64,000 bases of DNA from Thecamonas trahens ATCC 50062 (Eukaryota; Protista; Apusomonadida): the NCBI RefSeq assembly GCF_000142905.1, contig NW_013657611.1, positions 70,946 through 134,945 on the forward strand, read 5' to 3'. The notes beneath the pieces were generated by a model. That model had not been told where the DNA came from and did no database searches. It worked only from the letters and a program-made list of their open reading frames with translations. The position numbers and the translations under genes are program-made. This document shows positions 1-4,018 of this stretch, one piece after another. Within the stretch, counting starts at the first letter, position 1. The number at the start of each line of letters is the position of its first letter.

Positions 1-2739
1 GTCGGCAGCCACAGGATCGATCGCGTTGGCCGGCGCGCCGGCGACAGTCATGACAAAGACCTCGGACACGTCGATGAGCTCCAGACTCACGGGCGCGGTC
101 GAGATCATCGCGCCGCTGCGGCTCCAAACCGCATTGATCGAACCAAATCCGGCCACAACATCCCACACCGACTCGCCAAACACCGACGCCCACAGCCGGT
201 CGTACGAGCCGACCGGCTCTGTCGCGTTGACCAGCTCGGGCATGTCAAGTCGGGACGCAAGGTCCAGCGGGCGGGACGCCGTCGCGTTGACGCGCGATGG
301 AGTTGCCTCGAGATGGCAGAGCCACTCAATGTTGACGCATTCCGAATCGCTCGCCATCGGCCCAAAGTCGTCGTCGTCGTCGTCGACGCAAACCTGTTCT
401 GTCGAGCATGTCATACCCATTGCGCTTGTCGGGTCCACACTCGCCGCTGCCCCATCCACTAGCGCGTTGCGCATCTCGGCTAGAACCGCCGTCCACCGCA
501 CTTCACCCGGTCGTGGATTCGCTGCCACGTAGCTGTCGGTGACGGCAAAGACTGGCCAGCCAAACACGACACTGCTCGGCAAGAGTGGGCTCGACTCTTG
601 GGAAAGCCGGACGAGCTCGTGGGTGAGCTCGAGCCAGTGCCCGAGCACCACGTCGCAGTCGCCGCTGCTCACTGACGCCGGATTGAACGACGCAAGCGTG
701 TCCATCGCTGCTCGGACCGATGACGTGATCAACGGATTGAGTGTAGGAGCTAGAGCAGCAATCACATCGACGTGCTCCGGCGGGACGCAGACCCGCGTCG
801 CCCGCGCCAGCAGCTTCTCAGGCGTCACCAACTGCGTCGGCTTGGAGAGCCCGTTGCGAACGCCGACCGCCGTCAGGCCGTCGACAAGCAACGGCGCAGT
901 CGCCGCCGCCGGCTTGGTCGCCAACGCCGAGCTCAGCTCTGACGCGAGGCCAAAGACAACGTCGGCGTCGGTCCGCAGCCCAAACCCGCCGACCACCACC
1001 ATCGTCGGCTGGCCGAGGACTGCCCGGGCCAGCGCTGCACACATTTTGGCTCCACCGGCATGCACAACCCCGGACGTGTTCGACATCGCGCTGCCGATAT
1101 CGTTAGTCACCAGATGGCAGACTAGGTGACCGCGCGCTCGGATGCGATGGACCGCAAAGGCGTCAACCACTCCGTTGACAGGTACCCGTCCTGAAAAGGC
1201 ATCAAACGTGGCAGCAACTTCAGACGGTGTCCTTTGTGGCGATGCAGAGTGCGCGGCCACAGGCAGCTGGTCCGGCACGCTGGGCGTCGGCGATGGCGCA
1301 GCGCCCAAAGTGTCGTGGCCGCTGCCGAGCTGCAGTTCCCCGCCAATCATGACTCCGCCGAGAAAGGCAGTGACCAGCAAGAGCACGCCTGCCAGCACCA
1401 GTGGCAGGATCACAAGCCGTTGCCGCCGTGGCTTGGTCTCGTTCTTGGGCACCTTGACGGCATCAAATGTCTGGGTTGCCTGATGTGGCTCCGGCTCCGG
1501 CTCCGGCCGCTGCGGCGACGACCGGCCGGCTGCCACCACCCCAAGCCGCAGCACGCCATCATGCCTGCCGGGCGCCGCGAGTGAGAGTGCCGCCAACGGA
1601 ATGCTGTCCATGCCACCGCTGTTGTACGGCATGTTCTTCGATGTCCAGCTTTGCAGCTCTGATGATGCGCCGACATCATCTAGCTCGATGCAGTCCGAGC
1701 TGACGTCCGAGCACGTTGCGGTGACTGACGGCGACGACGCAGGCGACTGCGCCTCCAGCACCGTCTGAACCCGTTCCAAGAATCCGAGTGCAGCTGCGTG
1801 CGGAAGCGGTGGCTTCGCCACGGTCGTCAGCCACAGGTACGCCGCAAACCCGGCATTGGGCGCCAGCCCTACCAAGTCGCTACCGGCGAGCCCGTGAATC
1901 GCGTGCAGCTCGCCAAGGACAAGCGACGACACTGGATGACCGCCGACAACCGCGGCAACCGTGGCATCTCGGACGCCATCCACGGCGAGCTCCGGCAGCT
2001 CATCTCCTATCGAGACCGAGGCCAGGAGCGCAGCAAGGAGCATCGGCTTATCGAGCACAGCCTCGAGAACACAGATGCCAAACGCGGCGCCGGGAGTGAC
2101 CAGCAGCGGCCAGCCGCGCCGCTCGACCGCCGCGCCAACCGCAGCCACCGCCGTCGAGTTCAGCTTCTCGGCCGCCCACACCAGCGCAACTGCAAGATCA
2201 GCCGCGAGTGGCAAATCCAGTGACTCATCCGCGAGTGTCGACGGGAGATAGGCTCCGATGGCATGTGCAAGCTGAGGCGTCGAGCCAATGAGCTTGACGT
2301 GTGCAAGCTCGATCGTAGCACCCGTCCCAAGCGCATACTGGTGGAGAAACGGTGAGCCCGAGCCGGAGGACCACGAGCCCGGCGACGGCGCCGCAGTCGA
2401 GGTCGATGATGACCTTCGCTCGTGGTCGATGAGCAAGTGTCGCCGTCTTCGCGAGTGCGAGGTTGAGTCGTCCGATCCATCCGAGCTATGCGAGCCTGAG
2501 CCCGATGCTCGAGTCGTCCGTGTCCGCTTGCCACGTGCCACGTGCCAAAAGACCGAAAACGTGCGAGAATTGGACGCCAGCGTCGTCCCATCGGTCAGCA
2601 CCGCAGTGATGGTGACCGGAATGTCGGCCGCGACGCGGGGAGCGCGAGACCGAGCGCAACTTGGGACACCTCGCCGACGTGCGACGCAAACCGTCGGGCC
2701 TGCTCGATCACCACAGACTGCGGAAGGAGGACCAGGACG
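1..2739 (-). CDS. Single-pass membrane protein with C-terminal AapJ/BztA-like amino-acid-binding domain (3' end beyond window; probably joined to the 2650-4018 segments through frameshifts)
   Basis: Manual translation shows a stop-free minus-strand frame from 2739 to the window edge, absent from the ORF track because it has no stop in the window. Hydrophobic helix LVILPLVLAGVLLLVTAFLGGVMIG at about 1345-1415, then HRIRARGHLVC, MCAALARAVLG, RPGEVRWTAVL, PVGSYDRLWASVFG and INAVWSRSGAMISTAP, matching AapJ-family landmarks in order. Confidence 0.7.
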
Positions 2740-4018
2740 TCAATCGACGAGGTGCGGACGACCACAGAAGATGTTGGATCCGCTTCTAGCTCGAACCGAT
2801 GGGTGCCAAAGATGAGCTCGACTGAGCCGACTCTAGCCGAGTGGAGGCCAGTGAACGATGTCGAGACATGCAGCGGCGCGCGCCGATGGCCCACCCCGCC
2901 ACAGACAACCCGCCACTGGCGAGCGTGCACATGTCTGGCTGTACCGTCGCAATCCGCAGTCGTGGTGGAGGAACGAGCGAGTTGCTCAGCTGCGGCGCGT
3001 ATTGCGAGACCAGCGCATGCTGCATCGACGCCGCCAGCAACCCGTCGCCCGGCAACCCAAAGGCATCAGTAGACATGCCAAGCACGTCGTTGAGTGACCA
3101 GTCCATCTGGATCGTTGACAGGAGCGCAGGATCCAGAGATAACCCTGACATCGGCGCCAGCGCCGCCGCGGCGCCTACCGCTGGCCCGGCATGAGCCTGG
3201 GGGAGCCGGATGCGTGCGCGATCGAGCCGGACAATCGAATCCGAGTCACGGGAAACCGACCGGAGTGAGACCCAGGCCCCAAAGTCGGAGCAGTGGATGC
3301 GAGCACCGGCGACGGTGCCAGGAGCAAGCGTCGACATTCCGACTGTCTGCCCGAGGTCAGCGATGAGCGCCTCGAGCGAAGAGAACGACGCCAGGTTGCC
3401 GCGCCACATGTGCCATCCGTCGTCCTCGAGGTCGACTGCGCCAAGCGCGACAAGGACCACGTGATCGCCGGCCTCCGACAGATTCGGTGGCGAGACCGTC
3501 TCGGTCATGCTCGACGAACCTGGCGTCGACGCCGCGTGCGCCTCGGCAGCCGACGGGCCCGGGCCGGGCGAGCTTGCAGGCGACGGCTCTTCGATCCACT
3601 TGGACGCGAGGACGGTGTTGGAGAAGACGGCAAAGACATCTGACTCGGCAACTAGCCGCACGTCTGGCGCCACTACGGCGTCCAAGACCAACCGGACGTC
3701 ATCGAGCGTGCCACGGATGACACCAAGCGAGGCACGTGCCGCCGACAAATCGATGATACCCTTGGAGAGAACAAGGGTGCCATCGCAGACCGCAATCCTG
3801 AGCTTGCGCAGTGCAAAGCGACGGCCCGAGATGAAGACCGAGACGGCAGAAGCTGGAGGTGGCTCGATCGTCGACTGGCCAGAGGCGCTGGTCAGCTGTG
3901 GTGGAAGGTCGACAAGCGCTCGCCAGCGTGAGGCAATGACGCAGCCCGGATGCATGGTGCCTCGGGTGGCGAAGCGTATGCGGCCACGCACCACCCGATT
4001 ACCAGCTACAGCACTCAT
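2650..4018 (-). CDS. Hypothetical protein; likely N-terminal part of the gene above, broken by two frameshifts
   Basis: 443-aa ORF 2786-4117 (first ATG at 4018). The protein-like path switches to ORF 2595-2930 at a GC dinucleotide run (about 2876-2884), then to the 1-2739 frame at a 4-base run (about 2637-2640). Confidence 0.5.

What the first reader, a model, noticed from the sequence alone, without database searches (positions are those of the whole stretch)
1..1450. Bacterial AapJ/BztA-type solute-binding domain on a eukaryotic single-pass membrane protein
Seen: a hidden minus-strand frame has a long N-terminal region, basic residues, one TM helix, then five motifs collinear with the ABC-type general L-amino-acid-binding protein (IRARGHLVC; CAALARAVLG; RPGEVRW; VGSYDRLW; INAVWSRSGAMISTAP), with a Cys/Asp-rich insert. 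Known: AapJ/BztA proteins are free periplasmic or lipoprotein partners of bacterial ABC permeases. Inference: with no permease in the window and an apparent type II topology, this could be a horizontally acquired ligand-binding module reused as an amino-acid receptor in a bacterivorous protist. This is one of the strongest candidates here for an undescribed system.
Basis: partly seen in the sequence, partly recalled or inferred. Interest (0 to 1): 0.8.

Follow-up and report, generated by a model that had tools for sequence, protein, structure and literature searches.

The report
AapJ-like binding domain in apusomonad membrane protein
A large membrane protein of the bacteria-eating flagellate Thecamonas trahens carries, between two membrane helices, a strongly diverged copy of the bacterial AapJ-type amino-acid-binding domain that has lost the usual ligand-holding residues, so it is a real but modest case of a bacterial binding module reused on a eukaryotic surface protein.

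Summary
The minus-strand frame at window 1-1450 is coding, and all five motifs are there. They belong to a full-length, very diverged AapJ/BztA-type type II periplasmic-binding domain (window 91-1188). Evidence: a three-paralog profile hits PDB 4z9n at E 3.3e-6; hhalign against 54 bacterial AapJ-like proteins gives 99.6% probability and E 1e-24; four cysteines are invariant in all 58 sequences; the alignment-based AlphaFold model (pLDDT 81) matches 4z9n at Z 21.3.

The interpretation needs correcting.
- The genome is Thecamonas trahens.
- The gene is about 1,400 aa and already has a public model as a hypothetical protein (1,361 aa).
- It runs through three reading frames, with two frame breaks.
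- A second membrane helix lies just outside the window, so the protein crosses the membrane twice and is not type II.
- It has two paralogs in this genome and one metagenomic relative.
- The genome has no ABC importer permease.
- The residues that normally anchor an alpha-amino acid are missing, so "amino-acid receptor" is unsupported.
- Diatoms already have annotated membrane-anchored AapJ/YhdW-like proteins, so this is a new variant, not a new kind.

Another first-stage note (s1-743496) flags a solute-binding ectodomain elsewhere in this genome. Function stays inferred.

The parts
1..90 (-). Extracellular stalk after the binding domain. The gene continues outside the window: second membrane helix at window -110..-42, 24-aa tail at -182..-111, TAG stop at -185..-183 (all within L001:1315-1458).
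   Evidence: Frame followed into the flanking DNA. Hydropathy peak of 2.87 at residues 926-956 of the 974-codon frame. Coordinates.
91..1188 (-). Diverged AapJ/BztA-type type II periplasmic-binding domain (366 aa), carrying the five motifs and four invariant cysteines (in RGHLVC, KMCAAL, RVCV at 784-795, DCDV at 649-660).
   Evidence: PDB profile hit to 4z9n at E 3.3e-6. hhalign 99.6%, E 1.1e-24. Invariant cysteines. AF2 pLDDT 80.7. Foldseek E 1.7e-8 and VIA Z 21.3 to 4z9n.
316..414 (-). Cys/Asp-rich insert (MTCSTEQVCVDDDDDD...WLC) in the C-terminal helical part of the domain. All four family members have a Cys-bearing insert here; bacterial relatives do not.
   Evidence: Alignments. This part of the model has low confidence, pLDDT 44-71.
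1189..1338 (-). Pro/Ser/Ala-rich extracellular linker between helix 1 and the binding domain.
   Evidence: Translation. Unstructured in the single-sequence model.
1339..1416 (-). Membrane helix 1 (LVILPLVLAGVLLLVTAFLGGVMIGG), preceded on the N-terminal side by the basic KPRRQR stretch (1417-1434).
   Evidence: Hydropathy peak of 2.92. Coordinates.
1417..2640 (-). Third-frame part of the large N-terminal region, presumed cytoplasmic. It holds a Ser/Arg-rich low-complexity stretch, a helical region and the conserved GVLRLGVVAAG motif (1525-1557).
   Evidence: Homology to paralog C2 residues 634-1427. Alignment A5. No Pfam or PDB match.
2622..2879 (-). Second-frame part of the N-terminal region. 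The frame changes near 2880 (a GCGCGC run) and near 2640 (a CCCC run).
   Evidence: tblastn of C2 residues 450-535. Sequence and three-frame translation.
2882..3955 (-). First-frame part of the N-terminal region. It starts at the public model's ATG (MHPGCVIASRWRA...), with no hydrophobic signal peptide.
   Evidence: tblastn of C2 residues 105-448. Public model P0142 mapped to the window.

Best explanation
This is the 3' half of a Thecamonas trahens gene of about 1,400 codons, one of a three-member, apusomonad-restricted family. Shown: the protein has a roughly 900-aa N-terminal region with no signal peptide and no detectable relatives; a membrane helix preceded by basic residues; a 366-aa extracellular domain that is a strongly diverged homolog of bacterial AapJ/BztA/YhdW-type solute-binding proteins, keeping the family's four cysteines; a second membrane helix; and a 24-aa tail. 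Inferred: both ends are cytoplasmic and the clamshell domain faces outward. The genome has no ABC importer permease, so the domain cannot deliver substrate to a transporter. It most likely acts as a tethered sensing or binding module, and its closure would be passed through the two helices to the large cytoplasmic region, in the way bacterial sensors use periplasmic binding-protein domains. The positions that anchor an alpha-amino acid are gone, so the ligand is probably not a standard amino acid and could be absent altogether. The module ultimately came from bacteria. Whether it entered apusomonads separately from diatoms is unresolved.
For: Coding frame. Paralogs on contigs C2 and C5, homologous over the whole length. 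Homology to AapJ: PDB 4z9n E 3.3e-6, followed by GlnH and PEB1a. In 1.84 billion proteins, about 130 hits at E 5e-11 to 1e-3; those I scanned carry SBP_bac_3. hhalign 99.6%, E 1.1e-24, 304 columns. Four cysteines invariant in 58 sequences. Fold: AF2 pLDDT 80.7, pTM 0.79; Foldseek 83 type II binding proteins at E<=0.001 with 4z9n on top; VIA Z 21.3 over 295 residues against <=15.9 for other type II binding proteins. Topology: exactly two strong hydrophobic segments in all four members, basic residues before helix 1, three N-glycosylation sequons in the ectodomain. No BPD_transp_1 in the genome, while 14 of 14 control genomes score. Eukaryotic host: eight or more tubulin loci; species named. An intact 1,375-aa relative on a metagenome contig, with cluster members from marine samples. 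A 99.5%-identical environmental contig covers the 3' end without indels.
Against: There is no direct evidence of expression, localisation or ligand binding. The window copy has two frame breaks relative to its intact paralog, so it could be a young pseudogene and not an assembly error. The N-terminal region has no recognisable output domain, so the signalling step is pure inference. The AF2 model was built on an alignment made mostly of bacterial AapJ-like sequences, which biases it toward that fold; the single-sequence model failed (pLDDT 38). Pfam SBP_bac_3 does not detect the domain. Loss of the ligand-anchoring residues fits a non-binding structural role equally well.
Confidence: 0.6

Rival explanations
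1. The domain is a genuine amino-acid receptor. It would bind free amino acids released by prey bacteria and signal feeding or chemotaxis.
For: It descends from the general L-amino-acid binding family. The organism eats bacteria (for the species; the feeding habit is from my own knowledge). The scaffold residues of the cleft region are kept: four cysteines, the Gly positions, W232, N352 and the GG motif.
Against: The Arg of the TWT..R motif (R in 34 of 54 bacterial rows) is A/gap/gap/gap in the family, and the whole segment is deleted. The lobe II Asp/Glu (34 of 54) is H/T/P/R. The Arg of RG.N.LW (50 of 54) is G/G/Q/A. Mapping these positions to alpha-carboxylate and alpha-ammonium anchoring rests on the LAO/HisJ paradigm and is my inference.
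Confidence: 0.12
2. The domain no longer binds small molecules. The family would be a structural or adhesive surface glycoprotein, for example for gliding or prey contact, that keeps only the disulfide-stabilised scaffold.
For: Loss of pocket residues. Extra Cys-rich and acidic inserts and N-glycosylation sequons. Fast divergence between paralogs at about 30% identity. No recognisable signalling domain.
Against: The two-helix arrangement with a conserved 900-aa cytoplasmic region is elaborate for a mere anchor. Both lobes and the hinge topology are retained over the full length.
Confidence: 0.2
3. The window copy is a decaying pseudogene or an assembly artefact of no function, and only the paralogs matter.
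For: There are two frame-changing indels, at a GCGCGC run (about 2880) and a CCCC run (about 2640). Homology to the intact paralog runs straight through them. The public model bridges them with implausible 26-29-nt introns. This copy alone has lost the extra Cys pair before RVCV.
Against: There are no in-frame stops in any of the three segments over 4.1 kb, and codon-position GC bias is intact. The C5 paralog shows the same kind of break, and another reader noted such breaks in several genes of this stretch, which points to sequencing error. An environmental contig keeps the 3' frame intact.
Confidence: 0.08

Closest known systems
AapJ/BztA/YhdW general L-amino-acid ABC-transporter solute-binding proteins (Pfam SBP_bac_3 subgroup; solved example PDB 4Z9N from Brucella ovis)
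   Same: Homologous over both lobes and the family-specific C-terminal helical extension. The four family-invariant cysteines are kept. So are the RG..CG, C.A.A.A.L.D, R....RW and N..W..GG motifs.
   Different: Below the Pfam and NCBIfam thresholds. Held between two membrane helices inside a 1,400-aa eukaryotic protein, not secreted or lipid-anchored. No partner permease in the genome. The TWT..RD segment is deleted and the lobe II acid and the RG.N.LW arginine are replaced. There are extra Cys/Asp-rich inserts.
Diatom membrane-anchored tandem AapJ/YhdW-like proteins (Seminavis robusta CAB9529663.1, CAB9530033.1, CAB9505313.1, and unnamed relatives from other sources)
   Same: These are eukaryotic proteins with an N-terminal cytoplasmic-looking region, a membrane helix and then an extracellular AapJ-like domain. 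They have an extra Cys pair in the same loop before the VCV strand. A tree that forces the diatom and Thecamonas groups together is not rejected and scores higher.
   Different: They have one helix and two tandem domains, the second lacking lobe II. They keep the T..R motif. Their N-terminal regions are unrelated acidic stretches. They score far better against bacterial AapJ (1e-47 to 1e-62 for most, against 5e-17 for the window copy). In the free tree the two groups are separate, each at 99% support. No paper describing them was found.
Bacterial sensors with periplasmic type II binding-protein (Venus flytrap) domains: BvgS, EvgS, RmcA, and the GlnH-GlnX-PknG relay
   Same: A type II binding fold is used for sensing and not for transport. 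Their structures are among the fold matches: 4q0c, 3mpk, 9ilw, 7ejg, 6h1u. The ectodomain-between-membrane-segments logic is shared.
   Different: Those proteins have identified kinase or cyclase outputs. Here the cytoplasmic region has no recognisable domain. There is no evidence of common descent of the whole architecture.
Ionotropic glutamate receptor ligand-binding domain (S1S2)
   Same: It is the classic eukaryotic reuse of a type II binding-protein fold, and it appears among the structural matches at Z about 12. Thecamonas itself has several such channel genes.
   Different: In those receptors the two lobes are split by the channel pore and they match Pfam SBP_bac_3. Here the domain is continuous, there is no pore, and it belongs to the AapJ subgroup.

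Membership tests
AapJ/BztA-type solute-binding protein (type II periplasmic-binding fold) | Significant profile-level sequence homology across both lobes | tested here: met
   PDB 4z9n at E 3.3e-6 with a three-sequence profile. hhalign 99.6%, E 1.1e-24, 304 columns. A bacterial HMM scores the window copy 47 bits in one piece, HMM positions 36-345.
AapJ/BztA-type solute-binding protein (type II periplasmic-binding fold) | Two-lobed type II binding fold with the AapJ-specific C-terminal extension | tested here: met
   AF2 pLDDT 80.7. VIA Z 21.3, rmsd 5.6 A, 295 of 324 residues of 4z9n, against <=15.9 for other type II binding proteins. Caveat: the model alignment is mostly bacterial AapJ-like rows.
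AapJ/BztA-type solute-binding protein (type II periplasmic-binding fold) | Four family-invariant cysteines (presumed two disulfides) | tested here: met
   C24, C50, C134 and C178 of the window core are invariant in all 58 aligned sequences. Disulfide pairing itself is inferred.
AapJ/BztA-type solute-binding protein (type II periplasmic-binding fold) | Reaches the curated Pfam SBP_bac_3 or NCBIfam threshold | tested here: not met
   No family at E<=10 in Pfam or NCBIfam.
AapJ/BztA-type solute-binding protein (type II periplasmic-binding fold) | Residues that anchor the alpha-carboxylate and alpha-ammonium groups (Arg of T..R, lobe II Asp/Glu) | tested here: not met
   Arg is A/gap/gap/gap and Asp/Glu is H/T/P/R in the four members. 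The functional assignment of these columns is from the LAO/HisJ paradigm (my own knowledge).
AapJ/BztA-type solute-binding protein (type II periplasmic-binding fold) | Free periplasmic protein or lipoprotein with a signal peptide | tested here: not met
   The domain lies between two hydrophobic helices inside a protein of about 1,400 aa with a hydrophilic N-terminus.
AapJ/BztA-type solute-binding protein (type II periplasmic-binding fold) | Works with an ABC importer permease (AapQ/AapM type, BPD_transp_1) | tested here: not met
   No PF00528 match in the 28.7-Mb genome at E<=0.01, while all 14 control genomes score.
Membrane receptor with an extracellular Venus-flytrap sensor domain | Ectodomain flanked by membrane segments, facing outward | tested here: inconclusive
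   Two hydropathy peaks, basic residues on the N-terminal side of helix 1, sequons and conserved cysteines in the ectodomain. Orientation is inferred, not shown.
Membrane receptor with an extracellular Venus-flytrap sensor domain | Recognisable cytoplasmic output domain | tested here: not met
   No Pfam, PDB-profile, Atlas or word-search relatives for the 900-aa N-terminal region. A weak Atlas lead (0.83) to Ank-plus-SBP proteins came from the whole C5 paralog, not this region, and is below the level to trust.
Membrane receptor with an extracellular Venus-flytrap sensor domain | Ligand binding and signal transmission | not testable with these tools
   Needs purified ectodomain and cell biology.

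The most novel reading that the evidence does not exclude
Apusomonads may have a private receptor class. In it, an AapJ-derived clamshell domain with a rebuilt pocket, for a ligand other than a standard amino acid, would be coupled through two membrane helices to a roughly 900-aa cytoplasmic module of an unknown fold. That would be a signalling architecture with no counterpart in bacteria, animals, fungi or plants.
Probability: 0.25. Interest if true: 0.65.

Novelty: new variant of a known kind. Interest (0 to 1): 0.45.

Why it matters
Type II binding-protein folds were reused several times to build eukaryotic receptors, glutamate receptor channels being the best-known case. This family shows another route, in a lineage near the base of the animal-fungal branch. 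An AapJ-subgroup domain is inserted whole between two membrane helices of a large lineage-specific protein, in a genome with no ABC importer to serve. It gives the hypothetical proteins at this locus, at AMSG_01368 and at the C2 locus a domain assignment that Pfam misses. Together with the diatom proteins, it suggests that membrane-tethered AapJ-like proteins are an overlooked eukaryotic class. The practical value is limited until a ligand or phenotype is known.

Tried and rejected
- Pfam and NCBIfam scans of the whole frame, the paralogs and the upstream ORF found nothing.
- The word-index protein search with the ectodomain was blank and saturated by low-complexity words, so it is uninformative. 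The same tool on the N-terminal 850 aa of P0002 found only itself.
- Single-sequence AlphaFold failed, pLDDT 38.
- The PDB profile search of the N-terminal region gave only low-complexity noise.
The whole C5 paralog gave a 0.83 lead to Ank-plus-SBP proteins, too weak to use. The N-terminal 800 aa of P0142 gave nothing.
- A scan of JGI metagenome contigs for a 25-mer between the two frame breaks found nothing, so independent DNA across the breaks was not obtained.
- The literature searches gave no paper on AapJ- or YhdW-like proteins in Thecamonas or diatoms, and no record of run ERR1711916.
- Type II single-pass topology is rejected because of the second helix.
- Bacterial contamination is rejected. 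The paralogs sit on 650-680-kb contigs of a tubulin-bearing genome, and the gene's N-terminal 900 aa has no bacterial relatives.
- The annotated 26-29-nt introns are rejected as real, because homology to the intact paralog runs through them.

Full report
**What is in the sequence**

On the minus strand, one frame is open from window 2739 down to a TAG stop 185 bases beyond the window start, 974 codons in all. I followed it into the flanking DNA of the same contig. The window is G000:C69:70946-134945. GC by codon position is about 0.68 / 0.51 / 0.74, the pattern expected for a coding frame in this 64% GC genome, and it holds from about window 2100 to past the window start.

- the basic KPRRQR stretch (1417-1434)
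- a hydrophobic helix (1339-1416)
- IRARGHLVC (1117-1143)
- CAALARAVLG (1012-1041)
- RPGEVRW (493-513)
- the Cys/Asp-rich insert (316-414)
- VGSYDRLW (190-213)
- INAVWSRSGAMISTAP (91-138)

Sixty residues after the last motif, outside the window, lies a second strongly hydrophobic helix (window -110..-42), followed by a 24-aa tail. The protein therefore crosses the membrane twice.

Upstream, the gene continues in two other frames. tblastn with an intact paralog aligns window 3961-2882 in one frame, 2879-2622 in a second, and the rest in the third. The frame changes sit at a GCGCGC run near 2880 and a CCCC run near 2640.

The public annotation already has a 1,361-aa model for this locus (P0142). 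It bridges the breaks with modelled introns of 29 and 26 nt. Homology to the intact paralog runs straight through these 'introns', so they are repairs made by the gene predictor. The real cause is single-base-type indels. These are either sequencing errors or very recent mutations, and I could not decide which. The C5 paralog has the same kind of break, and another reader noted such breaks in several genes here.

**Organism and family**

The genome is 28.7 Mb in 131 contigs and has eight or more tubulin loci. The C5 paralog is AMSG_01368 of Thecamonas trahens ATCC 50062.

The genome holds three paralogs, homologous over their whole length:
- this gene
- one on C2, an uninterrupted open frame of 1,441 codons
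- one on C5

A HMMER search of 1.84 billion representative proteins with a profile of the three ectodomains found only three strong hits:
- the C5 paralog
- P0002, an intact 1,375-aa relative on a metagenome contig, whose cluster includes fragments from marine samples
- P0003, a 219-aa fragment from another metagenome assembly, with three residue differences from the window's C-terminal part; its 786-nt contig matches window 515..-242 at 99.5%

The roughly 900-aa N-terminal region has no relatives outside this family. Pfam, a PDB profile search, the Atlas, the word search and a search of the own genome all gave nothing else.

**Is the ectodomain an AapJ-type binding protein?**

By sequence and predicted fold, yes.
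- Pfam and NCBIfam see nothing.
- A profile of just three paralogs raises this to E 3.3e-6, followed by M. tuberculosis GlnH and Campylobacter PEB1a.
- In the big search, about 130 further proteins score E 5e-11 to 1e-3. Most of those I scanned are Pfam SBP_bac_3 proteins of AapJ length or tandem versions.
- Profile against profile (four family members against 54 bacterial hits) gives 99.6% probability, E 1.1e-24, 304 aligned columns covering both lobes and the C-terminal extension.
- The four cysteines invariant in the bacterial set are invariant in the family too.
- An AlphaFold model built on the joint alignment has pLDDT 80.7 and pTM 0.79.
- Foldseek finds 83 type II binding proteins at E<=0.001, with 4z9n on top.
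- VIA-align gives Z 21.3 over 295 residues for 4z9n, against at most 15.9 for other type II binding proteins.

Two caveats apply. The bacterial set was picked by similarity to the family, and the model's alignment is dominated by it.

**What it does not share with AapJ**

- There is no ABC importer permease anywhere in the genome (PF00528; all 14 control genomes score).
- The domain is not free but held between two helices.
- The Arg of the TWT..R motif is present in 34 of 54 bacterial rows but is A or a gap in the family, and the whole segment is deleted.
- The lobe II Asp/Glu (34 of 54) is H/T/P/R in the family.
- The Arg of RG.N.LW (50 of 54) is G/G/Q/A.

In the LAO/HisJ paradigm (my own knowledge) the first two of these positions anchor the alpha-carboxylate and alpha-ammonium groups. 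Binding of standard amino acids is therefore unlikely.

One bacterial protein, P0012, shares the deletion and a PDV(V/Y)FGSLD motif (36% identity over 74 aa with the C5 paralog). It has a lipoprotein-type leader and no permease gene on its short contig. It may mark the closest bacterial group.

**Relation to other eukaryotes**

Among the weaker hits are 830-1,030-aa proteins. Three are from the diatom Seminavis robusta and are annotated as YhdW or extracellular solute-binding protein. They have an N-terminal acidic region, one helix and two AapJ-like domains. AapJ-type domains on eukaryotic membrane proteins are therefore already in the databases, although I found no paper about them.

In a quick maximum-likelihood tree the Thecamonas family (99% support) and the diatom-like clade (99%) are each monophyletic and fall apart. 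However, a tree that forces them together has a log-likelihood 27 units higher, with p-AU 0.805. One eukaryotic origin is therefore not excluded, and long-branch attraction is not excluded either.

**Most likely mechanism**

Shown:
- the domain's identity
- two hydrophobic helices
- no signal peptide
- no permease in the genome
- loss of the pocket residues

Inferred:
- both termini are cytoplasmic and the clamshell faces outward
- it acts as a tethered sensor or binder whose movement is passed to the large cytoplasmic region
- the ligand is not a standard amino acid

Rivals are a true amino-acid receptor (0.12), a non-binding structural or adhesive surface protein (0.20), and a dead copy at this locus (0.08).

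**Verdict**

It is wrong on topology, unsupported on ligand, and overstated on novelty. I rate this a new variant of a known kind, with interest 0.45.

Noticed in passing
L009, L010, L011, L012, L013 and L008 (G000 contigs C6, C56, C41, C51): Thecamonas has at least six genes with Pfam SBP_bac_3 lobes split by channel-like membrane segments (F.PF...LW...SG.VIW..E..YQP). They look like glutamate-receptor-type channels, and two of them are adjacent on C56.
   Followed up: partly
L014 (G000:C1:131852-135160, minus strand): A different gene with a canonical SBP_bac_3 ectodomain, followed by a single C-terminal membrane helix and a tail. It may be the locus of the other first-stage note, s1-743496.
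   Followed up: no
window 2916-2944 and 2659-2684; L017:3855-3883: The public gene models P0142 and AMSG_01368 bridge frame changes with modelled introns of 26-29 nt that cut through sequence conserved in the intact paralog. These are probably predictor repairs of indels. The annotated proteins therefore carry short wrong-frame stretches, for example WRVVCGGVGHRR.
   Followed up: yes
P0014, P0019, P0039, P0105, P0130, P0132 (diatom-like proteins): The second AapJ-like domain of these tandem proteins matches only HMM positions of about 30-138 and 234-346. It lacks most of lobe II, so it is a half-clamshell.
   Followed up: partly
L019:1-34: The first 34 bases of this metagenome contig match the window in inverted orientation, next to the main 758-base match. 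This is probably an assembly artefact at the contig end.
   Followed up: no
L020 (contig of P0012): A bacterial AapJ-like lipoprotein lacks the TWT..RD segment and has no transporter gene on its 3.3-kb contig; its neighbours are an alcohol dehydrogenase and a NUDIX/NrtR regulator. It may be an orphan binding protein, and it is among the nearest bacterial relatives of the Thecamonas family by sequence.
   Followed up: partly
L002 / L016:7365-7994: Many long open frames on the opposite or alternative frames of this GC-rich genome are not genes, for example window 539-1129 (+), which lies antisense to the binding domain. ORF lists here need codon-position checks.
   Followed up: partly
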